Shown here: one piece after another, positions 10,429 through 50,212 of the stretch | Layout: the number at the start of each line of letters is the position of its first letter | How positions within the stretch are numbered: position 1 is the first letter of the stretch | Source of the DNA: Octopus sinensis | Taxonomy: Eukaryota | Assembly (NCBI RefSeq): GCF_006345805.1 | Contig: NC_042999.1 | Span: forward strand, 123,070,001 to 123,134,000 | DNA: 64,000 nucleotides | Direction: 5' to 3' | Translations under genes and position numbers: made by a program | The notes under the pieces: generated by a model | The model's input: the letters and a program-made list of their open reading frames with translations, nothing else | The model's database searches: none | What the model was told of the DNA's origin: nothing

Positions 10429-10744
10429 CATTTTATTTAAACGTAAATATCTGTAATATAAGCGATTATCAATGATTACTCCAAACCTAATAATAATTCC
10501 TAAATGTCTATTTTGATGCATGGACACAAGAAAATCCCATTTCTATTTAGTATTTAATAGACTTCTCCAAACTTGAATCAAATACAGCACTTCTAAAGAA
10601 AGAAAGCAAAAACACTTACCAGGTTTATAAGCAGTAGCCTGACTTATAATTTCGGTGGTGGGTATTTCTTGGGCTTAAATAATCCACTTACAAATTAGTC
10701 CTTTTCTTCAGTAATGCTACTTATTGGTGTATCATTTTTGTTTA

Positions 10745-11546
10745 TACATATATATATATAGTTATATATATATATAGATATAGATATATATATAGATATA
10801 GATATATATATATATAGATATATATATAGATATAGATATATATGTAGATATAGATCTATATATATAGATATATATATATATAGATATATGTCTATGTTTA
10901 TATATATGCATATATATATATATATATGTATATGTTTATATATATATGCATATATATATATGTATATGTTTATATATATATGCATATATATATATGTATA
11001 TGTTTATATTTATATACGCATATACATATATATGTATATGTTTATATATGTATATATATGTATATGTTTATATATGTATATATATGCATATATATATATA
11101 TATATGTTTTGTATATATATATATATATGTTTATATATATATGTTTATATATATAAGTATATTTATATATATATATATATATATGTATTATATATATATA
11201 TATATATATAATATATATATATATATATGCATATATATATGTATATTTATACATATATATATATATGCATATATATATATATGTTATATATATGTATATG
11301 TTTATATATATGTATATGTTTATATATATATGCATATATATATATGTATATGTTTATATATATATGCATATATGTATATGTTTATATTTATATACGCATA
11401 TACATCATCATCATCGTTTAGCGTCCGTTTTCCATGCTAGCATGGGTTACATATATATGTATATGTTTATATATGTATATATATGTATATATATGTATAT
11501 GTTTATATATGTATATATATGCATATATATATATATATATGTTATA

Positions 11547-11577
<31 letters not shown>

Positions 11578-11750
11578 GTAATATATATATATATGCATAT
11601 ATATATATATGTGTATATATATATATATGTTTATATATATGTATTATATATATATATGTTTATATATATGTATATATATATATATGTTTATATATATATG
11701 TATAATATATATATGTATATGTTTATATATATGTATATGTTTAATATATG

Positions 11751-11835
<85 letters not shown>

Positions 11836-11840
11836 ATGTG

Positions 11841-11882
<42 letters not shown>

Positions 11883-12260
11883 TATATATGTATATGTATA
11901 TATATATGTGTATATATGTATATGTATATATATATGTGTATATATGTATATGTTTATATATATGTATATTTTATATATATGTATGTATATATGTATATAT
12001 ATGTATATATATATATATGTGTATATATGTATATATATGTATATGTATGTATATATATGTATATATATATGTATAATATATATATATATATATATATGTA
12101 TATGTATATATGCATATGTATATATACATGTTTTAATATATATGTTTACGTACATATGTATGTTTATATATAGATATATATATATATATGTGTATGTTTG
12201 TATATCTATATATATATGTGTGTGTATATATCTGTATGTGTGTTTATATATATGTTTATA
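10745..12260. repeat. ~1.5-kb compound TA/TG/TAGA microsatellite with higher-order units
   Basis: Directly visible. It produces all the IY/YI-rich ORFs in the track. Confidence 0.98.
11403..11447 (-). mobile_element. Extreme 3' tail of the (CAT)n-tailed retroposon family, embedded in the microsatellite
   Basis: catcatcatcatcgtttagcgtccgttttccatgctagcatgggtt matches the tails at 40003 and 53641. Confidence 0.85.
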
Positions 12261-13483
12261 TATTCTTTCCTCCTCATTTTTAGATTACATGATTGTTGTA
12301 AATGAGTGTCACTGTGAATCAAGCAGGTTCATGTCTTCCTGATCTTCTATGAAAATATACCCTAACTAGAATCATATCTAACTAGAATCATATCTGGCTG
12401 TAGAAACTCTGCCTGAAAGTATTTTATTTGCCTTATTTGGAAACGTAAGCAATAAAACCTTGATTATAATCATGGTAATAACTATTGGATTCAAGTAGTA
12501 CCTTCAATAAGGGTTCTTACATACCACAATGCCTTATGCTTCAAGTCTTTCTGTGAATTGTACTGCATCGAGGGTCTTTTATTATGTTTTTTATATACTA
12601 GCACATTTGCATTCACTCACACAAAAACGCTGCTGAAAGTTGTTTAGATGATTTTGATAAATGATTTAATGTAAATCAATAATTTCTGCCAACCTTTCTA
12701 ATCAATTGGCTAAATTTCCTTAGAGATCATCTTTGTATTGCCAATTTTAAATCAGGAAATGATGGATTATAATATCATGCCTGTACATGGAGTTATTAAA
12801 GCATTTTACAGAGAAGCCTTACCTATGAATGTTTAGCTGAAAGCAGCCTACTTGTAATATTACATTTCAACATTTTCTATTCAATTTTCTTACATTAGTT
12901 CTAACAAGAAATAATTAAATTTTATAAACATATCCTTCAGCGAAGCTAAATTAAAATCCTTGATTTGCATCACTCAGGGTAAAATAAAAATGTGTTACTG
13001 ATGCCCAGTCTAGCATTTTTGTTACTACAATACAGTTTTTACTGATGTTATGATGCTATTTTTACATGCCAGGTGAGACCATCAAGTTTACAATGCTTCC
13101 ATTTTCCTTGAAAATATTTGACAGATTTCAAGCCAAAACAAATTTATTAGTTGAAGATCAAGCTTTGTGAAAATAAATCATAGTAAAAGTTGTCAGCTTC
13201 AGTTTGTCTTATTATTATTAATGTCAAATCTTAACGTTATTACATTTCTGCTTCTATATTGAAAAGAAAAAATAGAACAGAAAAAGAAAAAAAAATGCTT
13301 AAGCAACTAACTACTGCTGTTATTTTCTGTTTATTTTACACTATATCTTAGATTTGTTTCTTTATCTTGTTTATTCTTAATTTATTTTCTGTTTATTTTA
13401 CAATATATATCAGATTTGGTTTTAATTCTTGTTTGTTTATTTTGGCTCTTTTTATTGTCTTCTTTTGCTTCTTTATTATGCAG

Positions 13484-13492
13484 GACCAAGGA
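13484..13492 (+). CDS. Candidate 9-nt microexon
   Basis: Long T-rich tract ..tcttttgcttctttattatgcag|GACCAAGGA|gtaatt. UGC motifs lie in the tract. Confidence 0.5.
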
Positions 13493-14149
13493 GTAATTCA
13501 AACTAGAGATCATAAGTTGAGTTCTTTTACTTTGCGATTTTTTTTCCTCTCAGATTACGGTTTTATGTTTGTTTCTGTTATATAGTGCAATGTATTAAAT
13601 TCCACATAACTAGGTTATTATTGACCATATAATGTAGCCATTGTTGGGGTAGTACAGTGTTTATTATTTTGCTGAGTCTGTTATTTCACTTCTTAATTCT
13701 ACAAGCTACATTTCAATTGGCTGTTGAAAAGAGACTACAGGAATATTAGCTTCTATAAGCAGATAACCTACCTAAGCAGACACTGATTACAACACACACA
13801 CACAAACTAGAAAGGTCCCATTATTTCATTACTGTGTGTGTGTGTGGGGGGGGCATTTGCACATGGATATATGTTTATATTTATATATATATGGGGATCA
13901 GTTTTTGTTTTAAGGATGTTGTATTGAAACACAACTATGGTAAAATTTGATTTTTTTTTCTTTATTGGCATCTTCTATATCTGCATATCATTCCAAATGA
14001 TAAAGTTCCCAATTCCATTCTTATCATCAATGGTTCTAGAATATTTAAGCCTCATTTTCAGAATGTAGAATTGTTTTTGACTTCTGTACTACCCTTCTAT
14101 GATTGATCATATATCATCATTTAATGTTTGTTCTCCATACTATATATAG

Positions 14150-14217
14150 GAGGAAGTCATTCATCATTCATCCCTGATGACGTGGCTGGCTCATCAGAGG
14201 TGATGTTTGATGATAAG
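14150..14217 (+). CDS. Candidate 68-nt coding exon (phase 1 to 0): GSHSSFIPDDVAGSSEVMFDDK
   Basis: tttgttctccatactatatatag|GAGGAAGT...GATGATAAG|gtattc. Only this frame is open to that donor. An alternative in-frame donor GAG|gtgatg lies at 14199/14200. Composition is more GC-rich than the flanks. Confidence 0.55.
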
Positions 14218-14699
14218 GTATTCAATGGAAAGCCTTAGTACACTGCTATCTTCCTTAGAGCCAAAACAAATCAACTGTCAAAGAAAACAGAAGAAAAGAA
14301 AAGAAAAGATGAAATTTGGTCAATGTGGCATTTATACAGAACTAGCTTACCTGTTCTAGCCATCAACCTTAAAGTATATATTGTTGCTATTATGCAAAAG
14401 TGTTGTAAGTCCAAAACGTTGCCTTTTCAGAAAACGAAAAAATATTTTCACCATTCCATAGCAAAACTGTTGTACTACACTTTGGCAATTTTTGATATCT
14501 TGGCATCTGAAGCAGCTGGAGATATGATAGTTTAACCAAATGAACCAGCTATTGCAAGCAAACATAAATATTGAAGAAAACGCATTTGGCCAAATTTGGA
14601 CATGTGACAGTTTAAAATAATTGCAACAATATATAAAAGAATTAAATTCAAAGAATTGAAGAACCCAGCATAAGCACTTCAGATGAGGATCCATCTATT

Positions 14700-15300
14700 A
14701 GGTCACATAGTTAATAATAGATTCTGTGGCAGATTGAGCAACAAGCATTTTTGAACTTTGCTTATTTTCTAGGTATTTGGAGTTTAGTGTACTGGTATTC
14801 TGTTTTTGGTTATTTCTGTTGCTTGTGGGTGATCAGGTGTAGGTTTGATTTAGCTTACAATGACTAGAATTTAGAATATATTTAAAGTTGGGAGTAGTTG
14901 AATAATATAGTTTTATTGTGTTGCAAATTTGGTTTCTTCAGTGCTAATGGAATGATATTTTCCTCATTAGTTTGAAGATGTTTTTGCCACAAGAGTGTCA
15001 CTGCAACATTGAAAGGTTAGTTATACCAGGTGTTTGTGTTTCTGTTCCTATTTTCCATTCTAATATTTGTCTGGTTTGGCGGCTCTTTGATATATTGTAT
15101 CATCTTTGTTAACCTGCTTCTTTACAGGGCTTTTTCATAATATGAAGTTTGGCTTCTTGGGATTCAGTTTTGAGATTCTGGGTGAGTTCCTTGTGAACAA
15201 GCTTTGTTTATGTCTTTTAGGTGGTTTGTGTGTTACCAGGTTCCATTCCTATGAACTGCAACAGAATATATATTCTAAAACATACTGGATAATGCTTGAA
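14700..15300 (-). mobile_element. Decayed LINE fragment, probably R4/Dong-like ORF N-terminal region
   Basis: Broken minus-strand frames (LQFIGMEP.., ..N..FNVAVTL) resemble regions upstream of the RT in R4-group elements. Weak. Confidence 0.4.
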
Positions 15301-16180
15301 ACCTTTTATATGAGTGAAATGAAATTGTTTAATTAAGAAAAACACAATAAAAAGACTGGCATTGTGAAGTTTATTTGTTTTTTGTATTGTTCACTTTCTT
15401 TTTTATGAAGGACTTTACTTTTTTTTTAAATATATTAAGAATCTCCTAACATTTAGCCAGCCTCTTTAACTTGCTGATAGAAAAACTGAGGTCATCAGTG
15501 ATTATGAAAATCAAACTAAATTATCTAATTTCACCATGGTTACAATGATGGCCATGTGGCTGTGTTGTTTGTTTCATAACCAGCTGTTTCTTGGTTCAAT
15601 CTTACTTTGAATCTTGAGTGTCTTCTAAAATAGACTCAAGTTAATCAATGTTTTGTGAATGAAATTTGTAAATCGGTGACTGGCCTGCTGAAAACCTAGA
15701 ACTAATGATACCATTGTTCATAAAATGCATGACATGAAATAGGAAAATAAAAATAACCATACATAACTGATCATTGTTATATTGACATTATATACTTAAT
15801 CAATGATTGTGATGCTTTACTTCTATCTTATTTAGCCTTTATTCCTTATGATGAACACCAAATTGTTGGCAAGGCAAATTCATAAACTGTTTTTTTTTTG
15901 TTCAGAACTGCAGCTCAGTTCACATCTTTATGCTACTAATGCTCTTAAGAAATGCATGAACACCACACAATCTGGTTCTCCTACCTTATAGATTTGTGAC
16001 CTTGCGCTTAAGTAGAAATCAATACATTTGAATGCCTTAACCTCACTTGATAATCATTTCATATATTTTGTACAACTTCTTGACAAATTCAATGCTTTCT
16101 AGGAATTTAAAACATTTCTGCTATTATTGTATCTCACTTATCTTTTAAGTCGACCCCCTTTTTCTCCTATTTTGAATTAG

Positions 16181-16195
16181 CTGGTAGAAAATCAG
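16181..16195 (+). CDS. Candidate 15-nt microexon (LVENQ in phase 0)
   Basis: ccccctttttctcctattttgaattag|CTGGTAGAAAATCAG|gtaatc. Confidence 0.5.
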
Positions 16196-16544
16196 GTAAT
16201 CAATATTTCATTGAAGTTTTTTGTTCATGAAGCTATTGATTTCTGATTTATTTATTTATTTTTTGTATAGCAACTAACTCCTCCAAAATACTTTCCAATC
16301 CCATTCAATAATGTTGAGCTTATTTGTAAGTATGCCTTCTCATATTAGAGAAATGTAAACTAGAACAGAAGAAATACTTATACATACAGGCCAATTATCT
16401 TATAGTCTCTACTGCAGCTGTGTCTATTGTTATTGCACCGTTATTAAATTATTTTAAAGTACAGTTGGTTAGTTACTGAATTGCAGCATCCATGTCAAAC
16501 TTAATACTAATGATAGCAATGATGATGATGATTATAATAATGAT

Positions 16545-16778
16545 AATAATAATAATAATAATAATCTTTCTTTCTGCTGTAGGCACAAGGAAAATTATGG
16601 GAGTGGGCATTTAATAACATTGACCCCAGTGTTCAGCTGGTACTTTTTTTTTTTTACCTCAAAAGGATGAAATGCAAAGTTGACCTTGGCAGAATTTGAA
16701 CTCAGAATGTGAAGGTAGACAAAATGCTTAGCAGCATTTTGTCTGGCCTGCTAATAATTCTGCCAGTTTGCCACCTTG
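16545..16778 (-). mobile_element. tRNA-derived SINE (family A) with (ATT)n tail
   Basis: Reverse complement: ggcaaactggcagaattattagc...ttctgagttcaaattctgccaaggtcaactttg..aagtaccagctgaacactggggtcaat. Same family as 31.7, 42.6, 49.8, 56.1 and 57.0 kb. Confidence 0.9.
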
Positions 16779-16783
16779 ATAAT

Positions 16784-16815
<32 letters not shown>

Positions 16816-17209
16816 ATCAATATTATAATAATATTCAAATTATGAATTAGAAGAAGCACTAGTATTGCAAACATTATCAAACACACACAATGTATGTGCT
16901 TTGCTTGTCCATTAGTAGGCAGTGATTTAACAGTGGAGATAACTCTCAAAGTGTTGGGTTTTAAAACATTTGATGTCATAGACAGGTGAGACAACTCACC
17001 CCAAGTTCCATTCAGGAGTGATGGACATCGATGTTTTCCCATTTTTATGGCTTCTTAACATCATGTTCCTGAACCAAACTGGAAGTGTAGTGAATAGCCT
17101 GTCCATGACTACATGCAAGATAGTGTAAAAACCATCTCACTCAATAATAATGATGATGATGATGATAATAATAATAATGTTAATAATAATAATGATAATA
17201 ATAATCATC

Positions 17210-17263
<54 letters not shown>

Positions 17264-17289
17264 GCACTAGCACATGCTAATTTAGTTAA

Positions 17290-18330
17290 CATATGTTTTA
17301 TCTTGAGGTTTGATGACAAGTTTTATCAATTCTGAAGAATCTTTCTCAGAATTCTTGAGAATATAGGATGGTACTTTTCTGCAGGTTAACAATGCAAGTT
17401 TCAATTTCAGTCTTTTAGGTAGCATTTTGGGTATTGTACCTAGTACACCAATTACAACCTTGTTGTCTTGGTCTTACACAACCTCCTCAGTTCTCTGGCT
17501 AGATATTGATATTTCTCAGTTTTTTTTTCAATTTCTTTGGTATCAACTCTGCTATCATAGGGAATTGCCAAATCTATAATTTTACACTGTTTATTTTGTC
17601 CCCTATGATAATGTCCAGTCTTCTTTCTGCAGTAATATGTTTAGTCTTTACAGGGAAATCCCATCTTGTAAATTTCATTTTCTGTCACAGCCTCTGGCTC
17701 ATGTTCAAACCACATTTCTGTTTCTTTGAAACCATTCCAATGTTCTCTTTTGCCTATGCAGTCATGTCTGCATTTATACTCCTTTTGCAGTAGTATTCTG
17801 CACTTGCACGAAAGGTGATTGATACTTTCATCTCCTTTCCTGTAGATTCCATCCTTTTCCATCTGTTTTTCCTATTGTTCTTTCTTTTCTTTTTGAATTC
17901 TCCTACTGTTTTGGTCACTTTTTGGGTATCTCTGGCTGCCAATAGTATTCTTCCTTTACTTCTTTTCCAGACCTAGTATTGCAGTATTAACCATACCTTC
18001 TACATTTAGTAATTCTCTGCTATATTTTCTTGGTAGGTAGAGTCAGCTAGTATTGCTTTCAGGGTAGAGTGCATGGTGCATTGTAGACAGTTTTCTCATT
18101 CTTCCATCCAAGTTCTGTAACTCAATCTTTGTCCATTTCAGAAAAGGAGCAGAGTATCTCAGTACAAGTATAGCCAGTGTATTTATGGCTTTAATGATGT
18201 TTCAAGCACCTTCCTAATTCAAGCACCTTCCTAATTCAAGCACCTTGTACCCTTTAGTAACGTTCTCTCTAATTTCTCCTTCCATTATCCTACTGTCTTG
18301 TAGCACTCCAATGTATTTGTACCCCTTGAT
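17290..18330 (-). mobile_element. R4/Dong-like LINE (RT C-terminus plus restriction-like endonuclease)
   Basis: Minus strand: GYKYIGVLQ.., RYSAPFLKWTKIELQNLDGRMRK..MHHALYP...LYLPRK, then RRLDIII.DK..IDLAIPYDSRVDTKEIEK.EKYQYLARELRRL..VVIGVLG (RLE motif). Both flanks are (TAA/ATT)n. Confidence 0.85.
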
Positions 18331-18331
18331 T

Positions 18332-18386
<55 letters not shown>

Positions 18387-18389
18387 GAA

Positions 18390-18772
18390 AATTCTCAGCT
18401 TATTTTACTGGGTATGATGGAAAGTGTCAGCTGTCCACAGCTAGAAGACTAAGGTGACACTTGTCTTTTTGGTCATGCTCCATGAACACTGGGAAGAATT
18501 CTTGCAGCTCCAAGCAATACTGATTTTTGAAGCTGTTCTACCTTCGTACTTGTGCCGATCATTTTCAGACATGATAGTTGAGTGCCGATACTTCCAAGTG
18601 CACCAATTACTATTAGTATCACGTCTACTCTCTTCATTGACCACAACCTTCATATGTCCTTCTTCAGATCGTCATAGTTGTTTATTTTTTATTTTTCTTT
18701 CACATTGATCCTGTTGTCACTGGGGCATGCTATATCGATTATCATACGTTCTTTCTTCACCAGGGCATGCCT

Positions 18773-18775
<3 letters not shown>
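18390..18775 (-). mobile_element. Second R4/Dong-like LINE 3' fragment (RLE domain and 3' UTR)
   Basis: MIIDIACPSDNRINVKEK..YDDLKKDI.RLWSMKRVDVILIVIGALG..LQKSVLLGAARIL, flanked by (ATT)n and (GTT)(CTT)(ATA) triplet runs. Confidence 0.85.
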
Positions 18776-18808
<33 letters not shown>

Positions 18809-19824
18809 CTTCTTCTTCTTCTTCTTCTTCTTCTTCTTCTTCTTCTTCTTCTTCTTCTTCTTCTCATTATCATTATAATAATAATAATAATAATAATAAT
18901 AAGTAACTATATGATGATTAGAATTCAGAACTGTAGGAACTGCAGCTTTTGGATCTACAGAGATTGAGTGGGAAGTTATTTCATTAAGCCATGTTAAAGA
19001 CAAGTAAATCTGTAGTGAAATAAGTCTATGATTTTATTTGTAAATTTGATAATTAACAGAACTAGAAAAAAGAACTGTTTCAAGATGATGCACAGTGCCT
19101 ACAATATCTGAAATCAGCCCTCCTAGAATTGTATTCTAGCCATGGTTGAATGTGGTGCATATTTTGTAACTTTATCTTTTTTTGACATTTATTCTATAGC
19201 TTTACATGAACATGATTAACATGAGAATTTTGAAACAGTATTAATTATGATCTAATTAGGGTGTAAGATGTATTCATTTATCTGCATATAGATTTGTATA
19301 TTAATGCATATCTTTACTTTGCATCTTCAAACCAATAAAGAACAAAAAAAGATTATGAAAGACTGATTGTGATTGTTGGTTTCTGATTCAATGAAGTGTA
19401 TGCTGAAGTTAAAAGGAACATATAGAGAAAGCAAAGCAAGACTGGAAATTAGCAATTTAGAAACAATGAAACTGTGGGTGTTTAGCAAATTGTGTGATTT
19501 ATCCACATCAAACTAATAATGAATATTATTAGATTAATGGAAGCATTATATGGTAACCAGATTATCAAATGGTTATGCTGAATCTACCAAATGGATTCTT
19601 TTAAGTGTGAGTGTTATATAAAAAGATCTACGTTTGCTTTAAAAATTGAAAGATTGTTTTGAATAGTATTTCATGACAGACGTTCATTAAAGAAGTTTTA
19701 AAATGAAATCTTGATTTATTATCTATCAAATGAAATAATTTTATTTTATTAAAGATATGTTTTTGAAGTGTGTATACATGCAAATAGTTTTCCTCTGTAA
19801 TATATATTAGACATAATCAAATTT

Positions 19825-19867
19825 TTATATCTTTTTCTCTTTTTCTTTTTTTTGCTTTTAGGTAAGT
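19825..19867 (+). promoter_or_regulatory. Candidate recursive splice site (zero-nucleotide exon) TAG|GTAAGT
   Basis: ~30-nt nearly pure pyrimidine tract ctttttctctttttctttttttttgcttttag immediately followed by a perfect donor GTAAGT. The AG is at 19860-19861. Confidence 0.6.
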
Positions 19868-20952
19868 CTTATACACGTTTGCTGTTTTCATTGGTAATGT
19901 ATACATCAATTTGCTGTTTAAGATTTTGGTAAATGTGGCATTTTATGTTTAAAGTATATAATAAAAAAGAAATGTGATATTTTTCTTTTATCTACTAACT
20001 TTAATGTACTGTGTGCAATAATTTCAACTTAAATTTCATGCTATATCCTCTTTATGTTTTAACTATTATAACATAATTATAATTTATGAAAGATGTCTGA
20101 ATAATTTCTGAAATTCAGTAGCAATGAATATTATTTTAGGTGACTGAAAAAGAATACATATAAGCTATTTTATGCTGATGCAACCAGTTTCTTTCACATT
20201 CAGTTGCAACCTATTATGTATGATGCAATTAAATGTTTTTGTTCTTTTTTGCTTTTGCTTTCTCAGTTATTAACTTGTGCTTTTCACCCAAGTTCTATTG
20301 AAACTTATTTTAATAATCATTAAGTTATTTTCTTCTATTTAATACCTGTTTACTAAAACTACCATTCCCATGATTTTTTCAACGCTGTTATTTTTTCTGT
20401 AATAAATGTACAATTATTGGTAACTTTGTAAAAATTAACAGAACTGACAAAATGTATTGAATAATAATATTCTCTTTGTTTTTTGTATATCTTTATTTTG
20501 GTTCTGTTCAATAGTTTAATACAAAATAATTCTTATAACTTATTTGGCTATTAGTAAAAGACACAAAATTTCTCATTAGCCAGTTATTTTCATTTGATTG
20601 ATTAAAGAAGTACCACTCCAGTATTTATATTCTTTTAAAAATAATTACAGCATTTCCGTAATTTGATAAAAAGTGATTTGGTTCCGATAGATTTTTCTTT
20701 AAAGAGCAGGACATTTGTTTTGTAGGGTTTTGATTAATGATCACTGCAATATTCATATTTATTACATCTCACTAAAATGTCAAGTTCTCTATAGTAAAGA
20801 CTGATTTCTGTAATAAATTTGTAGTATTGAACAATTGCTCATAGTATTGCTTGTTCATAAAATATTTTCAGTGGGGTTTCAGCAAGCAGCAGCTCTTGCT
20901 ATGACTTACTTCATAGCATTACATGTTCATTTGAATTTTATTTCTAGAATAG

Positions 20953-21006
20953 ATCTCTGCCAATTCAAGTGATGACTTATTGTTTAAAGATGTGAAATCT
21001 ATCAAG
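20953..21006 (+). CDS. Candidate 54-nt coding exon (phase 0 to 0): ISANSSDDLLFKDVKSIK
   Basis: gaattttatttctagaatag|ATCTCT...ATCAAG|gtaatg. One frame open, the other two have stops. Protein not recognised. Confidence 0.6.
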
Positions 21007-21095
21007 GTAATGTACGAACATGTTGGAATTATAAATTGTTCAATATTTTGGGGAAGTAATATTGAAAGTTGATTTGAATTTTTTTTTTCTGCTAG

Positions 21096-21097
21096 AA
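21096..21097 (+). other. Candidate 2-nt microexon (AA)
   Basis: aattttttttttctgctag|AA|gtaagt, 89 nt after the donor of the 54-nt exon. Confidence 0.3.
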
Positions 21098-22196
21098 GTA
21101 AGTCTCCTCAGTTGCTTTAGCTGTATTATATTCATTTAATAACTTACAAATCTAATGAATTTCAAACTATATGGAAACCCGATAAAGTTTATCAATAGGC
21201 ATAATTTAAAATGAGTCAAAATTATGAGACGACACCAGTATAAAATTGGATTCAATTTATTTTTATTTTTTCTGAAAAAAACATTTTGCTGAAATTTTAA
21301 TAGCATTTGTATTGGACAAAGGATTAGAGATGCTTTAAACTTTCCAGTTTAGAGAAATTAAAACCAACAACAACCAAGAAAAAAAGACAATTAAACAATC
21401 CCAAGTTTATTTTTGTTTTATTGTTATTCTGATTGATATGATAGAAGTTATTTAGCATAAACATCTTACCTTCATTCAGATATACAAATTTACTGTTTTA
21501 TATGCAGTAGTCTGTGGCCCAAATATTTTGTTCTTTTTTAAATTCAGTGTTAAACAATATTTAATAGGTTAGCATATTTATATGTAAAAGCACATAATTT
21601 CTTGTATTTTCCAGCCATTTTATCCTACTAATCATTGGCATATGGTTGATTGAACAATATTTAAGCAATCTCATTAAAGATTAAATGATACTCTGATAAC
21701 TTAGTGAAATAGTTTATGACCAGAGAGTATTAATGCCTAGCTGTTTTACAACATTGAACTTTGAAGTAATAGCATGTTGAAATAGAATTCAGCTTTGTAT
21801 AATTTGAAACAAGGAGTTACTTGTCAATCATGTAGCTTCTATCAAGTACGTCAGTACAGAGCTAAGGCACATGATGGGAAAACTAAATTAGGATTAGTAT
21901 TAAGTGTTCAATTTATTCTTGTTCTATTCCCCTATCTATTTTCTTAGGTTTGCTTCCTTAAGGTTGAATAGAACAACAATATCTGCAAAACCAGAATGGT
22001 TTTCTATTTTTGGCATCTTAGGCTGAAGAAATGAATATAATTTTGTACCAATTCTGGCACAAGTTTTGACTTAATCTATGCAATATATTGAGAAGTAGAA
22101 ATCTGCCTGCTTTTTATTTAAAAAAAAATTATTCTTTATCTGAAGTTTTCTTTCTCAGTTCTTTTATTTGGATATTATTGCAACTTAACTTTGTAG

Positions 22197-22200
22197 GAAG
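22197..22200 (+). other. Candidate 4-nt microexon (GAAG), or the end of a 42-nt exon starting at 22159
   Basis: ttgcaacttaactttgtag|GAAG|gtaagc. An upstream acceptor gttttctttctcag at 22158 would give 42 nt instead. Confidence 0.35.
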
Positions 22201-23669
22201 GTAAGCAATGTTTGTCCCATAGAATGCAAGAGTGCACATATAAATATATGCATCACTGCTAAAGGTTTTAAAAAAATTTATTCTCTTTCTTTTTCTTTGT
22301 TTTGTGCTGTGCAGAAATACTTGTTTAGTACATCTCATGATAGTTTTTGAAAATTGATTAGTAGACTAGATAACAAGATGAGAAGAATGATAGTTAAACA
22401 GTTTTTTGTTAATAAACGTAAAGTATTAATGACAGGATCCTGAGCTTAATCTAGATTACCAAAATCAGATTTTATTCTGCATAGAAAGTGTTGAATTATA
22501 TGTCACTTATCCATCCCTTAAATATAGAAATGCACTGTATTGTAGTTTCCAACATACTTTTTTGTGTGTCTGTGAGACATTCTGTATATAACTTATACTA
22601 AACATCTTAATACTTTCTGTTGGCCTATATTTACAAAAGTATGAAAAATAATTGGCAGCATAAAATTTGAAGACTAGTTCTTATTGTTAAGCCTCAGTTT
22701 AACTCATATTGAGCAAATTTATGTTCAAAAGTGTTCAAATTGTGATCATCCTTTCTGTTTGAAACATAATACATCCAAAAACTATCTTGAATATATTGTA
22801 CTTCAAATTGTGATGGTAGGGTATTTTGAGAGATTTTTGGCTGCTATTTCTAACAAGCAACCCTTTAGAGGCTCCTAAATTATCACTTGACTCTCTCTCT
22901 CTCTCTCTAACCAATAGTTGATGATGAGCAAATATGCAAAGTGACTTTACCTTGCTCTAAAAGGTAGCTGTAGTTGTTATATATTGTTTGCATGTCCAGT
23001 AGGTACCTACTAATACTATTTATGTATTAACAATGTACAGAGAGCATTCTACAAGCTGAAACAGAAGAAACACTTCAATGACTCATTATAAAAACTCTCA
23101 TATAATTTCACAACAGCCCTTCAGACAAGCAAAAAAATATATATTGATAAGCTATAGTCACTGAGGAATATGCGTCTAAGACCAAATAAAAACAAAGTAC
23201 TTGTTAGCAAATAGTCACTTAGAACTCAGCTTTTAGTTCTTATGTGCACTAATGCAAAAGAGTATTCCTTGCCAAGCTTGGTCCAGAGACTGGTGGCTAT
23301 ATTTCTTAATTGGTGGATAAATAACTCTATTGTTAATGATTTCAGTTACATATACATATAAAATTTTACCCTGTAGTTGTTTTTATTTGGTTATGATTTT
23401 TAATACAACAATAGAATTCTTCCTAAATTTTACAGTTATTTTACCCTTTTCGTTTTAGCTTAATTTCAGTTAAGCAAAATTGTTTTTTTTTATGTAGTCT
23501 AAATGTATGACTTCACTTAATAAAGATATGGAATTTGTTTGGCATTCTCATAGTCAGACAGGTATTTTAATTTTCTCCAGAGTCAGCACTGTCATATCTA
23601 ATTAATACATACTTCTTTTGATCAAAACAAGTAAAGATGCACATGAATATTTACATTCATGTGTGTATG

Positions 23670-23717
23670 TGTATTTTAACAATATTTGCCTTTTTATCTC
23701 TCTTGCATCAGGTGAGT
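23670..23717 (+). promoter_or_regulatory. Candidate recursive splice site CAG|GTGAGT
   Basis: ttttaac (branch-like) ..tttgcctttttatctctcttgcatcag|GTGAGT with no other AG in the preceding ~70 nt. The AG is at 23710-23711. Confidence 0.58.
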
Positions 23718-26700
23718 GGGTCTACAATTCTAAAAACTAATGTCACCAGTTTAACACTTGTTTTCAGGTCTTCACTGGTTTTCTATTTCTGGTTATTTCT
23801 ATTTTGAATTTGTAGAGTATTTTTTCACCCACCATTGGCTAAGACCATCATGCTTGTATTGGCTAAGACCATTAATATCTAATTGCATTCTTAAAATCAC
23901 TTACTTTTAGCTTACTGGGAAGAGTGTGAGTCTATGCCTTACTTGTGAACATAATTCAAGACATTGCTGAGTTGCACAAAAGACACCTGTCTTTTTATGG
24001 ATATATGGTGTTAAGAAGTTCTGCATAGTGACAGTAAAATGTATATATAGTTGCAGAAGGTGAAAGAGGATAAAAGAATAAGGTCTCAGCATATTAGATT
24101 CCACAATGATGATGACATAAAAATGAGATGATTAGCGGTACATGTTTTTGCAAACATATCTAACAAATGGATGTTAAAACTATTAAAAAATGCCTATGAT
24201 AGCAGCTAACAAAATGGTTATCTGTTCAAATGTTAGTTTAACAATTGTAGTGAACACCTGGGTTGAGTTTGATGAATCTGGTTGTTTAGGCTGTCTTTTT
24301 TCACAACAACTTCTATGATTTCTGTTGAAATTTAGCAGTAGGAGGGGCATCCAGCATCAAAAGCAATTACTTATTCCATTATTATGAAAATACCCTAATC
24401 TGCATAAACTCTCACCCATTTTAACATGGAAAAGATTAATGTAAAATGTGTGCATATGCATATGTTTTACTGCAGACTGTAGAATACAACATTAGTCATG
24501 TAGCAAACTATAAAGTAGAGAAGGCTTCCACTTTTATACACAAGTGCTGGAAAACTACTAAATGCTTTGAAATGTTAACTATTGTTGGAGAGTTAACTCC
24601 ACCATTATTTTTACTACTTTACATTTTCTCTTGGTCAAGAAGTTGTTCAAAATGTAAACAGGTTTAATCTAATAGGCTTTGTGATCCCAAACATATAGGC
24701 TTTATGATATATATATATATATATATATATATGTGATATTGTATATGATATTGTTTGGCATGTGACTGGTTAGAATGTTATCATTGGTGTTGCACCAACC
24801 ATTGCGCCTAGACCATTCATGGCTTTTTAGACATACTGACTGGAAGTGCATGGCCTGTTTTATGCTGGAGGTACATAGAATCTAAGTTGGCTCAATCATG
24901 GTATAAAGAAATGGAATGAAACATCTTGAAACACATTATATCATTTTTTTCAAGAGTTATTTATCAAGGATTGGTGTTAGCCATGACTGAAGTGTGTAAG
25001 CTAAATGTATGTGTGTATTGTTCCATAATTCAAAAATAGATATGTCCATGCTGCCAAAATGAATTTGCATTCATGAGAGCAGCATCCAAGTTTAGGAAAG
25101 CAACCAGTCCATGTAAATCTTTTAGAATGATTTTCCTCTCATCTAAGCATAGCTTGCACCTTCTGCTTCCATTCAGATGTGGCCCAGAATGTTTCAGCAA
25201 CTTTCAGTTGATTTTGTGCAGTTATAAATAACCACTCTGTTATTTATGCTGAGCATGCTTTTTTCTGATTTATGGACAACTAATTCATAGTGTGTGTGTG
25301 TGTTTAGATAATCTGAAAATTATATGTGGGCATGTTGATCAAAGCATGATTAAATACTGAAAGGTTGATCTATTTGACTTATCTATTATCACCTCAAAAA
25401 TATGGAAATGTAAATATAATTCTGCTAGGCAAGGCAGTTCTAAACTTGATATTTGGTTTGTTTGTTATATCAAGCAAAGCCTTTACAATATGATGTTGTT
25501 TATTGTTGTTTATTGTTTGCTGGAGTAGTACTAGGTTGAGGCTTTGCAGCCCCTATTAATTTGAAATAAACTAATAGAAACATTGGCTTTCCAGTATTTC
25601 AATTCATCAACATGAGTAATATTGCATATGGCATTCATTAAAATGGCAATTAAGTATTTCAGTGATATAACATTATGAGAGGGAATAAAAATTTATCCAA
25701 ACTGCAAAAATATACACATTGTGGCTCACTGCTGTTGCATAAATCATAATAGCTTAGATCTCGTAAATAATTTTCCCTTAAAAATATTATGTCTTTATAA
25801 TTATTTTTCATGCAACTATATATATATCTCATTGTTGGCTCTGCAGAAAAACAGCATGTGCAAACTTTCCTTATACCATTTTAGAGTTTCTTTTATTCTT
25901 ATGTTACCTGTAATGGTTGAAATGCATAAAAACACAAAGGCTTTTATTGTTTCTCTCTAAACTGCTGTCATTCATATAATGAGTGAAACACTTGTGCAAA
26001 CAGTCTGTTATAGTTGATATTTGTACGCTATTTCATTGTGGGAGGTAGACTATTGTCTACGAAGAATAAAAGACTATTATACAATTTGTGGATGTTTTTG
26101 TATTTCTCTTTGAAAGCTAGTCAGATCAGATTAACAAGAATTTATTGGGAGAGAGTTTGGTCAAAATACAGATGTTGTAGTTTTAGTGAAGCATTGAATA
26201 AGAATTCTTTTTACAAACACACATGAATGTTCATGCATGTAAGTTTTTATCTGAAATTATTATAAATCCTAGTTTGATTATGCCTCCCCGAAATGTAGCT
26301 TATGTTTCTCCTTTTTTGTGTCATTTTCAATATATTAACTGGAGTTTAAAATGAGTTCAAAAAGATTAAACAATTGAAAATTATTTCTTTTTTGTACTTT
26401 GAAACATTTCTTAAAGTTATTTTTCTTGGTGTGATACAGTACATTGAAAAGAAATTGTGTACATGTTGTTGTGTAGTAACTTTTTGGATCTTAGTATGAG
26501 AGTTTTGTTAGTGGACAACTTTTGTATTATATTGTGTAAGTTCTCATTGCTGTGTATTTGGTGTCTTTGTGATATTATATTTAGTTGTAGATTGTGTATC
26601 TATTTTATCATTATATTCATGTCCTTACTGCTTTTTCATACTGTCAGTGATTTAAATTATATTTCTGTATCGTTTTTGTTTTCTTTTATTGTTTTATGTA

Positions 26701-27848
26701 ATATTTGAATTGTTCAAACACTAATTTCATCACTTAATTTGTGGAAAATGATGTCAATTGTCCTTGGCCTGCTAAGTGTTCCTAGATTCTTTGTTAATAA
26801 TGATAATTTTATCACCATTTCGTCACACATGCTCCTACATTTTTCATTAATAATGTTGATAGTTTTCCAACTTCATCATCTCTTACTACACAGTTTTTCG
26901 TCTGTAGAAGAAAAACTACTCTGTCTTCTCTTGATTATTTTAAAAGAAGAGCTAAGGCAGGGATAATAGCAATGTTTAGACCAGCACCTAGCTCAGTTTT
27001 ATAAAGAAAAAATGCTAATTTTATTAATTTTTGTTTTTAAAATATTCTGTAAAATATTGCTAGCATGTGTTCAGAATTTAAACCTGACTAGAGTTGTGAT
27101 TAACACTAATTCTAGTTTGTTGAATGAGTGCTCCTTAGGGAGAAGCTTATGAGTCCCAAAGATGCGACCTGTTTCCCCTTCATTTTGTCTGTACATGCTG
27201 AGCCAAATGACTGGGTTTTTTTTTCCTTTCCTCTTTAAATTCATGCACTTGTTTGGCTAAATCGATTCTAGTAATGTGAAGGAAATTGAAAGATTTTGCA
27301 GCAGAAATAGTGCAAACCTTCCATCAAATATTGCTCTTTTCATGGAAGACCAATATGTATTTATTTGGACAATTTCTATCTCCATTTGCATTTGAAATAC
27401 TCTTAATAGGACTGAATATGAGATTTTTTGCTGCACATTTTAGCACACAAATTTTGTTAATATCTCATACTTTTTCCTTTATTTTTAATAAAATTGTTAT
27501 GATGTCTGTTAACTCCTTTACCCATTTACTTTGGCCTTCATTATGAATAGGGTTTTTAAGAATAATTGTCTCTATCTGGCCTGTGAAATCTAGTTTAGGC
27601 TTCAGTTCAGGCTGCAACACCAGATGTTCTTGACACCTCTGAGCCAAGGGCTCATTGTAGGCTGAGAAATTGTTAGTAACTTGGTTGTCATATTAACTGT
27701 CAGAAGGGTGATATTATCAAAGCTTAATCTTCATGTCTTAATTTGCATGCTGGCTTTATCATTAGTTTTATTATTTTATCAGTTCATAACTTGTGAGATA
27801 ACTTATAATTATAATGATCTTTAGTTTTTTCTTATGCATCTATTCCAG

Positions 27849-27851
27849 ATG
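27849..27851 (+). CDS. Candidate 3-nt microexon (ATG)
   Basis: ttttttcttatgcatctattccag|ATG|gtacac; TGCATG at 27914-27919. Donor is only moderate. Confidence 0.33.
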
Positions 27852-28531
27852 GTACACAGTACACTTTTGTTATCTAACACACATTGTTCCTTCACATTAT
27901 ATATTGAAACCAGTGCATGCACATACTCACAGATCCTCTCATTCATGTACTAATCAGTACCTCTAATAGCCAGTCAGCCTTTCTCTTTGTTTACAGTCAG
28001 TCTCTCCTGTCCATATTGCATGCAAATTTAATAGATCTTACTTGTTCTTTTCCAGTTGCTGCATTGTTATTTATCACAGACATGTCACATATCTTTAGTA
28101 TCTAAAGATGATCATCACATAGAACTTAAATTCACAAACCTCACTGGTTTTTATCTCTTGCATTAACTGGATTACTATATGTAGGATATGATTATTCTCT
28201 TCTATACTCACTATACATCATTTTCCTGTTCTCTGTTTGCATATCATCAAGAATGACTACATTATTGATTTCTCAGTACCTTTTTCCACCAGGTGTACCA
28301 GAAACAAAATTCCTTTATTACTTTCATGATCAGCTTGAAACCTTTTCATTTAGGCCTCTGATATTCTATAATTTCATGCAATCTGATTGGATAGGAAAAT
28401 GTTAACAACAAGGTTTAGGTATTGAATTTTCTCTCAGTTTTTCCATTGATCATCAATCTCTATCACACGGATTTAAGTTAAGTATGTTTTCTAAGTTGAC
28501 AAATGTAGAATACAATCGTTTTCTATTTTAG

Positions 28532-28540
28532 CTGAGACAG
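28532..28540 (+). CDS. Candidate 9-nt microexon (CTGAGACAG)
   Basis: atcgttttctattttag|CTGAGACAG|gttcct; TGCATG at 28587-28592. The intronic part of the donor is weak. Confidence 0.33.
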
Positions 28541-30049
28541 GTTCCTAATACTGTCTTTCTGGTTGTGGTATAAAATACATTTGTAATGCATGAGTTTTTA
28601 TTTTTAACACAAAATTCTACCATCTTTATAACTTCATCTTATTATATTATTATTATTGTTGTTGTTATTAACTTTATTATTTATTTTTTGTTTTGTTTTT
28701 AAAGCTCTCATACTTCTAACAACATTTAACAGAAGCAGTTTAATGTTATATTGACATCTCAATGACAGTGGATACCCTACTACTTAACTAACCTTATAAT
28801 CTGATTATTTAAGTCAGTGCCCAACAGCACTGATTCAACTGTACTTGATCCTGAAGTTGTTAAATGTCTTCAGTTCTCTTTTCTGTATTTCTAACTATTT
28901 TATTAATTTATTAATAGTTAACCTTTGGGATCACTAATACAAACATTTTCTGTTATATGTATCAAATATTTTAATATATTTCTATTTTCTTTCCCCTTTT
29001 TTACATCTCTGTACCTTTAATCTCAAATTCTCCCTCAATATCATCATACTGTCAAAATAATGTGTGCACTAAAATGCTTATTTAACCTTGATTCTTTGCA
29101 GACAGTTTCAAGTCATCTATATAGAGGATTACTTTATGTTGTCTACATCTAATTAACGGTGGTGCATCAGCATGACTGCAGCTCTGAGCTGAAACTAGAG
29201 AGAAAAAGAAAATATGTTCATGTTTTAGCTATTCATAATAGCAGTTTTAAAATTCGTTATATTACTACAAAAAATAAGGAAGACAAACTATCACCCTGAA
29301 AAATTCCTCTATTGGTCTTATACCTCCTACCTTTACTCCAGAGTAGGATAATTTTGCTTTATTTTGGCCAACTGGGAATCTCTGCTACTCTTTCCTTCTC
29401 TAGGCATCTTATTATGTTAAAATTAGGAATCCTGTCATTGTACTTTTTATTAATCAATCAGGTCTGTGTAATCCTGTGATCTTAGATTTATCAATTATTA
29501 ATTTATCCTAAATGCATATATCTTTCCTCTGGTATCCTTTCTGATAAAGTGATGATGTAATCTATCTATCTGTCTGTCTGTCTGCCTGTCTAACCATCCA
29601 TCTGTCCATTTGTCTATCTGTCTGTCTGTCTGTCCACTTTAGCTATTATAACAGTCAGTTGTATTTTTTGAGAGAAATATGTCATTAGTTAAGGCGCCCA
29701 TAGGTGATACATATTGACCTGCCAATTTTTCTCAGGTCATTTCATACCATCTTAAAAAAGGAGAGTCACATTGGATAGTAGGAGGGTTACAGTGGCTATA
29801 CAAAAAGATGGAATGATCAGGACTGTAATGCCTTTGGTTATAGATCTGTTTGATCTAATAGGGCCAAACACTAACAATATGTTGTCATTCTAACTGTTAG
29901 CTGTATTTTCTTTTTAGCTCCCTTAATGTTTTCTGTATGACAGAATATTGTTTATTTTCCCAGATATTTTTCCTTATAATAGGAAGGGAATTTTGTTTAT
30001 AACAAACATTCTTGTAATTCTTCAATACTATGGGCTTTACTGATCATTA

Positions 30050-30900
30050 TTTAATTACAATTTCATAATGAGCTGCTGTTTTGTCATTATAAAGTCTGCT
30101 TGTTTACCACTGGCTGTATTTTCTGCAGTATTTAGCATTTTTTTCTTTGCTCTATATTTTGTTCTAATGCTGTTCACATTCTTCAGTATTAAGGGTGACC
30201 TTTTCATTGTTCCAGTCCATGTTTATCTTGTGGTAATACCACCTTTGTTGTATGCAAAATATAATTCTGTCTGTTATTTTGTGTGTCCTATGCTGCAATA
30301 TTTCATTTTAGTTGTATAGACCATGAATCCTTACTTAAGGTTACAAGTTTTTTTGCATCTCAAGAAATCAAGCACTGCAAAGATTCTAGTTCTATTCTGA
30401 TATCTCTGTAACACACTTAACTGCTACTGCAATATTTTGAGGTTATTGTGATTCATCTCTTTCACAAAGAGTTTAATTTTTGTTAGTGATTTGCTCCTCT
30501 TTCTAATTTCCCTGTTATGCATATTCAAAAGCATTTAGAAGCTTGTTCATCTGTGTTAGATGATCAAATCTAATATAGTATTAATTTTGTCTGAGATTGC
30601 ATTCAACTTTTGTTTTACACATCTTTACTTTTCCAAGTTCTTAATCTTTGAAATTTTCCTCTTTAAGTATGTTCTGTTTTAAGATATATTCTCTTTTGTC
30701 ACTTCCTAATGTATCAGTAGTCAGTTCACCTTTCATCCTAATTGGTTTCTTAGGTATATTATCTAGTTTCTTACTATTTTTCATAGTTCAGTTTTTTATC
30801 GTTATTTTTTATTGTTACTTTTGCTTTCTTGTTATAAAAAGTGGATTTACAGAATCAGTAGAGTTTCAAACAAAATGCCTTGCAGTATGTAGTAACATTG
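30050..30900 (-). mobile_element. Decayed LINE endonuclease remnant (RTE-like)
   Basis: Broken minus-strand frames with TW..SP..N/ADFIMT..DQ-like APE C-terminal motifs. Heavily mutated. Confidence 0.35.
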
Positions 30901-31149
30901 TTGCACCTTCTGGGTAAGAAGCTTTTCTCCTTATCATGTTGATAGTATAGGTGTTAGTCAAATACTGTGGCAATTTAATACACTATTCCCTACTCTAAAA
31001 TTTATTATTTCTAATAATTGTTTTAAAATTTCAGCGCAATGCCTTATTGAACATTTGCTTCAACAAGAAATCTTATTCTTAATTTTCAAAATGCTGTTTA
31101 TTATTATATTAACAGAGTAGTTAGCAAATATTTATCATCATGGATAAAG

Positions 31150-32700
31150 CTTTCACTTCTACATCAATATCCATGGACTTTGGTTTGGCTTCAGTTCAAC
31201 TTACTATCACCTATCAGCATAGAAGTATCATCTTTTATTTCCTCTGAGACACAACACTCTCATCTCATATCTGTGTCTCATCTTTATATTCCATCTCTTT
31301 AGCTTACTCTTTTTACAACCAGCAATTATTTGACTTCTTCTAATCCCACATCAGGGAAATGTATTTCAACTTACATCTCTCTAATGCCATAATCTTTGCT
31401 GACTTCATTGCACACAAATCCCATTAGCTCTAACCCTCTCCTGATACAATCAAAGATAATGCGAATGCGAAATAGTTGGACTTCCTCAACTATCTTCACT
31501 GTTCAGTGTCTTTATACTTACATGTATCCCTGACCATCATAGCAACTACTATAACATCCTTGACCTCTTCCTCATATTTTCTCAGCCATTGCTGTTTCTG
31601 CTTTCATCATAGTATCTGAACACAGCTTAATCAACAGAAACTACATAATCAAAACACAATCGTTACCAAAGCACAATCAATGCCAAAGAAAATATCTTGT
31701 AGCAATTGACTCTTTCCCTACTCTTGAATAACCTTTTCTACTACAGACACAAGGCCTGAAATTTGGGGGAGAAGTAGTCAATTACATCAACCTCAGTACT
31801 CAACTGGTACTTATTTTATTGACCCCGAAAGGATGAAAGGCAAAGTTGACCTTGGCAGAATTTGAACTCAGAATGTGAAGACAGATAAAATACTGCTAAT
31901 CATTTTGCCTGGCGTGCTAATGATTCTTTTCTACTCTAGGCACAAGGCACTAAATTTTTGGGGAAGGGGCCAGTTGATTAGACCAACTCCAGTACAGAAT
32001 TGGTATTTAATTTATTGACCCCAAAAGGACGAAAGGCAAAGTCGACCTTGGCGGAATTCGAACTCAGAACATGAAGATATACCGCTTAGCATTTTGCCCA
32101 GCATGCTAACATTTCTGCCAGCTCACTGCCTTCCTACTCTTGAATAATATCACAAAGACTCTCAACTTTGCTTCAGATGACAATCTCACAATTAGTGATC
32201 GTTGTTCATGGGGACCACATATGTGTATTATTGAGTGGGAACTGCATTCCAAAAGCTAGGTTTTCTCTTCATGATTAGGCTCTACAATGCAACACCTAGA
32301 GTATTCTTCACATATCTTGTATGTAACAGCTACTTCAGATACAGATTTTATCCTAGATATTTATTTTATAAAAATAGACATTCAGCCATTCACCAACTCA
32401 ATCAATAACCCACAGAGATGGTTATTCTTATTTCTCTACTCTTCTACCGTCATTATAAGAAGATGTGTTCCTTCAGTCTAGCTAACTATGAACCACCTCT
32501 GCCCAAGCCCACCTTATGTATGGGTGTTACCACCTCTCATTAATCCACCTGTGTGTCACCCAACAAAACCCATATTAGTTTTCCTCAAAGCTTCCTTTGT
32601 GGGGCTGCTATTTGCTAAAAACAGAGTCTCTACTCATATATTTCTCTACTTATATTCCAACAGAACATCAACTACTTTGAGCTCATATACTTGCGGGAGG
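31150..32700 (+). mobile_element. Old CR1/L2-group LINE (EN and RT C-terminal remnants) interrupted by a SINE dimer
   Basis: FYINIHGL..FLxxT.. and AIIFADFIAH (APE motifs). Downstream: KLGFLF..QHLEYSSHIL..QPFTNSIN..LFLFLYSS (RT thumb region). Confidence 0.55.
31732..32132 (-). mobile_element. Head-to-tail dimer of family A SINE inside one 15-bp target-site duplication
   Basis: cctactcttgaataa at 31717-31731 and 32133-32147 brackets two tandem SINE units. Confidence 0.88.
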
Positions 32701-33059: not shown

Positions 33060-33223
33060 ATACATGTGTGTTTGTGTGCTAATATACATATATATATATA
33101 TATACATATATGTACACACATATGTATGTATATATATATATATACATACATACATATATACATACATATATGTACACATATATATCTGTATATATATACA
33201 CACACACACACACACATATATAT

Positions 33224-33256
<33 letters not shown>

Positions 33257-33294
33257 ATATATATATATATACATATATATATATACACACACAC

Positions 33295-33340
<46 letters not shown>

Positions 33341-34058: not shown

Positions 34059-34090
34059 ATATATATATACACACACACATATATATATAT

Positions 34091-34123
<33 letters not shown>

Positions 34124-34239
34124 ATACATATGTATCTATATTTATATATATATATACATTTACACACACACACACATATATATATATATATGCATATATA
34201 TACATATGTATCTATACATATATATATATAAATACATTT

Positions 34240-34290
<51 letters not shown>

Positions 34291-50112: not shown

Positions 50113-50212
50113 NNNNNNNNNNNNNNNNNNNNNNNNNNNNNNNNNNNNNNNNNNNNNNNNNNNNNNNNNNNNNNNNNNNNNNNNNNNNNNNNNNNNNNNN
50201 NNNNNNNNNNNN
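50113..50212. other. Assembly gap (100 N)
   Basis: Run of N adjacent to a TA microsatellite. Confidence 1.

What the first reader, a model, noticed from the sequence alone, without database searches (positions are those of the whole stretch)
19825..19900. Textbook recursive splice (ratchet) site TAG|GTAAGT
Seen: a ~30-nt almost pure C/T tract ends in TAG directly joined to a perfect GTAAGT. Established: this is the Drosophila ratchet-point motif. In vertebrates and flies such sites are followed by a cryptic RS-exon donor, and here TTG|gtaatg lies 32 nt downstream (19862-19893, readable as GKSYTRLLFSL). Inference: the long intron is removed stepwise, with the RS-exon occasionally included.
Basis: partly seen in the sequence, partly recalled or inferred. 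Interest (0 to 1): 0.72.

Follow-up and report, generated by a model that had tools for sequence, protein, structure and literature searches.

The report
Candidate recursive splice site, unverified
The sequence really does carry a near-perfect "splice in, then splice out again" signal of the kind flies use to remove very long introns in steps, and a second one lies 3.9 kb downstream, but no gene, exon, RNA or cross-species evidence could be found here to show that either is used.

Summary
Positions 19830-19859 are a 30-nt tract with 29 pyrimidines. It ends in AG (19860-61), joined directly to GTAAGT (19862-67). This joint motif is rare: about 0.003 expected per strand of the window, and 0.01 in shuffles. 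It meets the sequence-level criteria of fly ratchet points: TT at -5/-6, a branch-point candidate at -34, and a 51-nt AG-free zone.

A second site of the same build lies at 23710|23712 (CAG|GTGAGT) on the same strand. Both + strand AG|GTRAGT sites have strong pyrimidine tracts; neither - strand site does (hypergeometric p = 6e-5).

- The "RS-exon donor" TTG|GTAATG is no better than 15% of all GT dinucleotides.
- The proposed upstream exon (14150-14217) matches no protein and folds as a hairpin.
- No coding exon was detectable anywhere in the 64 kb, so host gene, intron and transcribed strand are unknown.
- No orthologous DNA could be fetched.

Verdict: a good candidate recursive splice site (about 0.45), possibly one of a pair. 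The main rival is an unused chance motif (about 0.35). If real, it is a new member of a known kind.

The parts
19824..19828 (+). [quoted passage not shown]
   Evidence: It lies within the -36 to -21 range of mapped fly recursive branch points (10.1101/006163). This is weak evidence: such pentamers are common in AT-rich DNA.
19830..19859 (+). polypyrimidine tract, 29 of 30 C/T, with TT at -5/-6 and a TGC at 19853-19855
   Evidence: 19 of 20 Y immediately upstream of AG; previous AG is 51 nt upstream.
19860..19861 (+). AG of the candidate 3' splice site
19862..19867 (+). GTAAGT, the 5' splice site that would be regenerated after splicing of an upstream exon to 19862
   Evidence: It matches the CAG|GTAAGT consensus at 8 of 9 positions and scores at the 99.6th percentile of all GTs on the + strand.
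19862..19893 (+). 32-nt interval to the weak donor TTG|GTAATG (19894-19899); possible cryptic RS-exon
   Evidence: Donor score -0.87, 85th percentile; length is not a multiple of 3. Not distinguishable from chance.
19862..19928 (+). alternative 67-nt interval to the weak donor TTG|GTAAAT (19929-19934)
   Evidence: Donor score -0.08; 67 nt is closer to the ~50 nt typical of fly cryptic RS-exons (PMC8605326). Also not beyond chance.
23675..23717 (+). second candidate ratchet point: TTAAC (A at 23679, -32), tract 23686-23709, CAG ending at 23711, GTGAGT at 23712-23717
   Evidence: 17 of 20 Y upstream; previous AG is 75 nt upstream. It lacks TT at -5/-6. Its flanks are unrelated to those of the first site (local alignment score 23 against a null of 24 +/- 3).

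Best explanation
The site at 19861|19862 is a zero-nucleotide recursive splice site (ratchet point) inside a long intron of an unidentified gene transcribed on the + strand.

Proposed course of events, all inferred:
1. U2AF binds the 30-nt pyrimidine tract and the branch point forms near A19827.
2. The 5' splice site of the upstream exon is joined to 19862, and the upstream part of the intron leaves as a lariat.
3. The new junction (exon end + GTAAGT) is itself a strong 5' splice site and is spliced onward. The next acceptor is either the similar site at 23711|23712 or the true downstream exon.
4. A weak downstream GT (19894 or 19929) may help the site to be recognised first as a short exon. 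It then loses to the much stronger regenerated donor, so the 32 or 67 nt are normally skipped. Their inclusion would shift the reading frame.

What is shown is only the anatomy, its rarity and the second site.
For: - Motif: one search shows the exact motif, and it is the best combined acceptor+donor site among the 381 AGGT sites on the two strands.
- Rarity: the joint expectation is 0.003 per strand and 0.01 in shuffles.
- Fly-specific features: TT at -5/-6 occurs in 99.5% of fly ratchet points but only 44% of ordinary fly acceptors (10.1101/006163). The branch candidate is at -34 and the AG-free zone is 51 nt.
- Second site: 23710|23712 has the same architecture on the same strand. Both + strand AG|GTRAGT sites fall among the 25 of 3242 AGs with at least 17/20 pyrimidines (p = 5.7e-5). 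Both - strand sites have 8-9/20.
- Independent origin: the flanks of the two sites are unrelated, so they are not copies of one repeat.
- Strand hints: in 12-32 kb the + strand has T/A 1.28 and AATAAA 16 times against 63 on -. It also has twice as many strong acceptor-like sites across the window.
- Donor competition: the regenerated donor is far stronger than the nearby downstream donors (6.4 against -0.9 and -0.1), the relation described for fly and mammalian sites (PMC8605326).
- Accessibility: the local RNA is not structured (z = 0.18).
Against: - No exon, gene or transcript could be tied to the window. Pfam found only transposase fragments. Intron status, intron length and sense strand are therefore all unproven.
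- The strand asymmetry is patchy. It fades beyond 32 kb and is mixed with C>G skew, so repeat content could explain it.
- The 3.85-kb spacing of the two sites is near the low end of fly recursive segments (2.6-63.6 kb, mean 18 kb; 10.1101/006163).
- The second site lacks the TT at -5/-6.
- The downstream donors are at chance level.
- In mammals most strong AGGT motifs in long introns are not detectably used (PMC8797253 reports that the event is rare in mouse brain).
- The thresholds of the association test were chosen after seeing the data; p stays at or below 0.003 for thresholds 15-17.
- No conservation data could be obtained.
Confidence: 0.45

Rival explanations
1. The site is an unused chance motif. 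A T-rich tract meets an AGGTAAGT octamer that composition alone predicts once per strand. Such a tract could be ordinary low-complexity DNA or the antisense remnant of an A-rich retroposon tail. The site is then never, or only noisily, used by the spliceosome.
For: - AGGTAAGT occurs at the expected frequency, and GTAAGT occurs 18 times on +.
- The + strand of 12-32 kb is full of acceptor-like tracts, with 46 strong ones on + in the window.
- No gene or exon was found.
- The downstream donor is at chance level.
Against: A second independent AG|GTRAGT with a strong tract lies on the same strand 3.85 kb away. It is expected about 0.011 times per strand-window. The - strand controls have no tract. 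TT at -5/-6, a long AG-free zone and a branch candidate all co-occur. No repeat membership was detectable within the window.
Confidence: 0.35
2. The site is the ordinary 3' splice site of a real expressed exon that happens to begin with GTAAGT (alternative, untranslated, poison or non-coding exon). Alternatively it is a dual-specific AGGT site, used as an acceptor in some transcripts and as a donor in others.
For: The acceptor is strong. Dual-specific AGGT sites are enriched among used unannotated human splice sites (PMC10809524). Expressed RS-exons such as the Ubx microexons have this same architecture (PMC8605326). The TGC inside the tract recalls the UGC elements of neuronal microexons; this last point is from my own knowledge and was not tested.
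Against: - The only donors within 70 nt are weak.
- 32 and 67 nt are not multiples of 3.
- The interval has no protein match, though it is too short to test.
- A GTAAGT immediately after an acceptor would compete strongly against any downstream donor (PMC8605326).
Confidence: 0.15

Closest known systems
Drosophila zero-nucleotide ratchet points (Burnette et al. 2005; Duff et al. 2015, preprint 10.1101/006163)
   Same: A prominent pyrimidine tract is joined through AG to GTAAGT. TT sits at -5/-6. The branch-point candidate is near -30. A possible second site lies in the same stretch (fly introns carry 1-6). The nearby downstream donors are weak.
   Different: The organism is not a fly. It is an AT-rich, microsatellite- and SINE-rich animal genome that I take to be a cephalopod from memory of its repeats; this was not verified. 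Host intron, junction reads, sawtooth coverage, lariats and conservation, which define the fly set, are all missing here. The 3.85-kb spacing is at the short end of the fly range.
Vertebrate and fly cryptic RS-exons (Sibley et al. 2015; Joseph et al. 2018, as summarised in PMC8605326)
   Same: An acceptor|donor pair is followed within 32-67 nt by a weaker donor. The interval is out of frame, as is typical of cryptic RS-exons.
   Different: The downstream donors here are no better than chance. At 32 nt the first interval is shorter than the ~50 nt typical in flies. Exon-definition dependence cannot be tested from sequence.
Dual-specific splice sites (AGGT used as either 5' or 3' site; PMC10809524)
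   Same: The same AG|GT core carries both acceptor and donor consensus.
   Different: Those sites are defined by observed use in both roles in RNA data; none is available here.

Membership tests
Intronic recursive splice site (ratchet point), Drosophila type | [quoted passage not shown] | tested here: met
   19/20 Y, TAG|GTAAGT. It is the top-scoring site of the 381 AGGT sites on both strands.
Intronic recursive splice site (ratchet point), Drosophila type | TT at positions -5 and -6 (99.5% of fly ratchet points, 10.1101/006163) | tested here: met
   ...GCTTTTAG has T at -3 to -6. The second site at 23710 has CA at these positions and does not meet it.
Intronic recursive splice site (ratchet point), Drosophila type | Branch point about 21-36 nt upstream, usually A | tested here: inconclusive
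   TTTAT with A at -34. The motif is present, but such pentamers are frequent in AT-rich DNA and no lariat data exist.
Intronic recursive splice site (ratchet point), Drosophila type | Lies in a long intron (at least ~11 kb in flies) on the transcribed strand | tested here: inconclusive
   No exon was detectable in 64 kb on either strand. This fits either a very long intron or intergenic DNA. The strand asymmetry in 12-32 kb favours + only weakly.
Intronic recursive splice site (ratchet point), Drosophila type | Exon-to-site junction reads, sawtooth intronic coverage and recursive lariats | not testable with these tools
Intronic recursive splice site (ratchet point), Drosophila type | Sharp evolutionary conservation of the AG|GT core relative to its flanks | not testable with these tools
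   No related animal DNA could be fetched. The metagenome scan with an exact 31-mer gave 0 hits, and window ORFs are not on record.
Cryptic RS-exon (exon-definition model) | A downstream 5' splice site tens of nt away that is weaker than the regenerated donor but functional | tested here: inconclusive
   donors at +32 (score -0.87) and +67 (score -0.08) against 6.44 for the regenerated donor. They are weaker, as required, but only at the 85th-90th percentile of all GTs.
Neuronal microexon | Very short, frame-preserving exon with a good donor | tested here: not met
   32 nt (mod 3 = 2) with the weak donor TTG|GTAATG.
Dual-specific splice site | The same AGGT is observed in use as both donor and acceptor | not testable with these tools
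   This needs RNA data.

The most novel reading that the evidence does not exclude
The sites at 19861|19862 and 23711|23712 are two working ratchet points of one giant intron in a lophotrochozoan, probably a cephalopod. Fly-type zero-nucleotide recursive splicing, complete with the TT at -5/-6 signature, would then be used outside insects and vertebrates and would probably be ancestral to bilaterians with long introns. In the paper library searched, one paper contains both 'recursive splicing' and 'cephalopod', and none has either term in its title or abstract. A broader search with 'octopus', 'mollus' and 'squid' listed no paper with a recursive-splicing hit among the 10 shown.
Probability: 0.35. 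Interest if true: 0.45.

Novelty: new member of a known kind. Interest (0 to 1): 0.3.

Why it matters
Recursive splicing has been mapped genome-wide only in flies and a few vertebrates. If this site and its neighbour are used, they would be a ready-made test case in a lineage with very long introns. They would also suggest that the fly-type motif can be used to predict such sites elsewhere.

As it stands, this is a well-formed prediction from sequence and not a discovery. The mechanism is known, the motif is the textbook one, and one RNA-seq experiment would settle it.

Tried and rejected
1. Host gene by homology.
- + strand open stretches of at least 18 aa from 12.3-33 kb, concatenated (3190 aa): no hit at E <= 1.
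- Non-repeat stretches of at least 36 aa from both strands outside 12.3-33 kb (4800 aa): no hit.
- Concatenation costs a few bits of sensitivity, so exons under about 30 aa would be missed.

2. Pfam on the same kinds of pieces.
- Nothing on +.
- Only DDE_1 and Transposase_1 on -. These also serve as a positive control for the method.

3. A simple splice-site, open-frame and GC-contrast exon finder gave only a few unconvincing candidates.

4. RNA genes: no Rfam family and no tRNA in the window.

5. Fetching related DNA.
- Exact look-ups of three window ORFs: not on record.
- Exact 31-mer scan of metagenome contigs: 0 hits.
- The other collections hold bacteria, archaea, viruses, phages and plasmids, so they were not scanned.

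6. Repeat origin of the motif. The site is not repeated in the window, and the flanks of the two sites are unrelated. An origin from the antisense A-rich tail of a retroposon was considered. It cannot be tested without genome-wide copies.

7. Neuronal microexon reading: rejected on length and donor strength.

8. RNA structure around the site: none.

Full report
**What the window is.** The 64 kb are AT-rich (27-39% G+C in most 2-kb bins). They are full of TA, CA and trinucleotide microsatellites, including a 1.5-kb (TA)n at 10743-12263. There is a 100-N assembly gap at 50113-50212. Several copies of a short interspersed repeat are present, as are transposase fragments (DDE_1 at 7469-7651 on -, E = 4.6e-8; a mariner-type Transposase_1 hit in 1.3-2.3 kb on -). 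This is animal nuclear DNA. From memory of the repeats I think it is a cephalopod, but no tool confirmed that.

**The observation.** One search confirms it base for base. Positions 19830-19859 are 29/30 pyrimidines, AG is at 19860-61, GTAAGT at 19862-67, and TTG|GTAATG has its GT at 19894.

**Is it more than chance?**
- The octamer AGGTAAGT is not unusual. It occurs once on each strand, against 0.6-0.9 expected on + and up to 1.25 on -. GTAAGT occurs 18 times on +.
- The combination with the tract is unusual. Only 11 of 3242 AGs on + have at least 18/20 pyrimidines upstream, which gives 0.003 expected joint sites on + and 0.001 on -.
- Dinucleotide-preserving shuffles give 0.01 per window for the pattern with at most one mismatch.
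- At genome scale that still allows on the order of a hundred accidental sites, so the motif alone does not prove function.
- The site is not part of a repeat within the window, and the RNA around it is not structured (z = 0.18).

**Fit to known ratchet points.** Duff et al. (10.1101/006163) define fly ratchet points by several features. Checked against this site:
- Juxtaposed acceptor and donor consensus with an unusually strong pyrimidine tract: present.
- TT at -5/-6 in 99.5% of cases: present.
- Branch points at -36 to -21: TTTAT with its A at -34 is available.
- The previous AG is 51 nt upstream.
- Location in introns of 11-133 kb, and strong conservation: these could not be checked here.

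Joseph et al. (PMC8605326) add a short cryptic exon of about 50 nt, usually out of frame, with a downstream donor weaker than the regenerated one. Here donors lie at +32 and +67, both out of frame and both far weaker than GTAAGT. They score no better than 10-15% of all GTs, so they are compatible with the model but carry no evidential weight.

**A second site.** Scanning all AG|GT junctions turned up 23710|23712: ttgcctttttatctctcttgcatCAG|GTGAGTgg. It has 17/20 pyrimidines, a 75-nt AG-free zone and TTAAC with its A at -32.
- It is the only other AG|GTRAGT on the + strand.
- The two on the - strand have 8 and 9 pyrimidines out of 20.
- The chance that both + strand sites fall among the 25 AGs with at least 17/20 pyrimidines is 5.7e-5. 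It is 3e-4 at threshold 16 and 3e-3 at threshold 15. The thresholds were chosen after the fact.
- The flanks of the two sites are unrelated, so this is not one repeat seen twice.
- Given the first site, a second on the same strand is expected only about 0.011 times per window.

This is the strongest new argument that the + strand is a spliced transcript here. Against it, the site lacks TT at -5/-6, and 3.85 kb is near the bottom of the fly segment range (2.6-63.6 kb).

**Host gene: not found.**
Its peptide shares no three 5-mers with any of 5.8 billion proteins. It has no Pfam hit, and the region folds as a hairpin better than 199 of 200 shuffles (z = -2.93).
- The 15-nt interval ending at 16195 is untestable.
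- Concatenated open stretches from the + strand at 12.3-33 kb, and from both strands elsewhere, found no protein at E <= 1.
- Pfam found only transposases.
- Rfam and tRNA scans were empty.

The window therefore holds no recognisable coding exon of about 30 aa or more. That fits the inside of a very long intron equally well as intergenic DNA.

**Indirect strand signals.**
- For +: in 12-32 kb the + strand has T/A = 1.28, AATAAA 16 times against 63 on -, and twice as many strong acceptor-like sites across the window. All seven loose matches to the ratchet pattern are on +.
- Against: the asymmetry is patchy beyond 32 kb and partly tracks repeat content. I treat it as weak.

**Related sequences.** None could be obtained, so conservation, the best sequence-only test, remains open.

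**Literature.** One paper in the held library contains both 'recursive splicing' and 'cephalopod', and neither term appears in its title or abstract. A broader search adding 'octopus', 'mollus' and 'squid' required any two terms, and none of the 10 papers it listed contained 'recursive splic'. Outside flies and vertebrates I found one motif-based prediction in a locust gene (PMC8892266). In mouse brain the process is reported to be rare (PMC8797253). That warns against equating motif with use in large genomes.

**Verdict.**
- Observation: confirmed.
- Interpretation: partly supported. The core site is a textbook ratchet-point motif and has a partner downstream, but the RS-exon, the upstream exons and the stepwise splicing itself are unproven.
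- Estimates: about 0.45 that the site is used recursively, 0.35 that it is an unused accident, and 0.15 that it is the start of an ordinary or dual-use exon.
- If real, it is a new member of a known kind.

Noticed in passing
window 23675-23717 (+): A second acceptor|donor juxtaposition, CAG|GTGAGT, with a 17/20 pyrimidine tract and TTAAC at -32.
   Followed up: partly
window 21082-21103 (+): TTTTTTTCTGCTAG followed two bases later by a perfect GTAAGTCT, the same 8-mer as at 19862. It is an acceptor-like site with a donor 2 nt inside.
   Followed up: no
window 43842-43863 (+): CCTCAACTTTTTATAG|GTATGT, a weaker AG|GT junction with a pyrimidine tract. All 7 loose matches to the ratchet pattern (at most 3 mismatches) are on the + strand.
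   Followed up: no
It folds into a hairpin at 14161-14212 with z = -2.93 against shuffles. It may be a structured element and not an exon.
   Followed up: partly
window 12001-32000: Strong strand asymmetry: T/A = 1.28 on +, and AATAAA 16 times on + against 63 on -. It fades beyond about 32 kb.
   Followed up: partly
window 10743-12263; 33082-33330; 34054-34326; 50113-50212: A very long (TA)n microsatellite of 1.5 kb and two further ones of about 250 bp. There is also a 100-N assembly gap flanked by (TA)n.
   Followed up: no
window 1300-2300 (-), 7469-7651 (-), 16549-16805, 31727-32133, 42607-42774, 56132-56344, 56797-57094: Degenerate mariner-type and Tigger/pogo-type (DDE_1) transposase fragments, plus five copies of one short interspersed repeat. 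Several further open stretches look like LINE 3' ends to me, but they have no Pfam support.
   Followed up: partly
It looks like a microexon but is too short to test.
   Followed up: no
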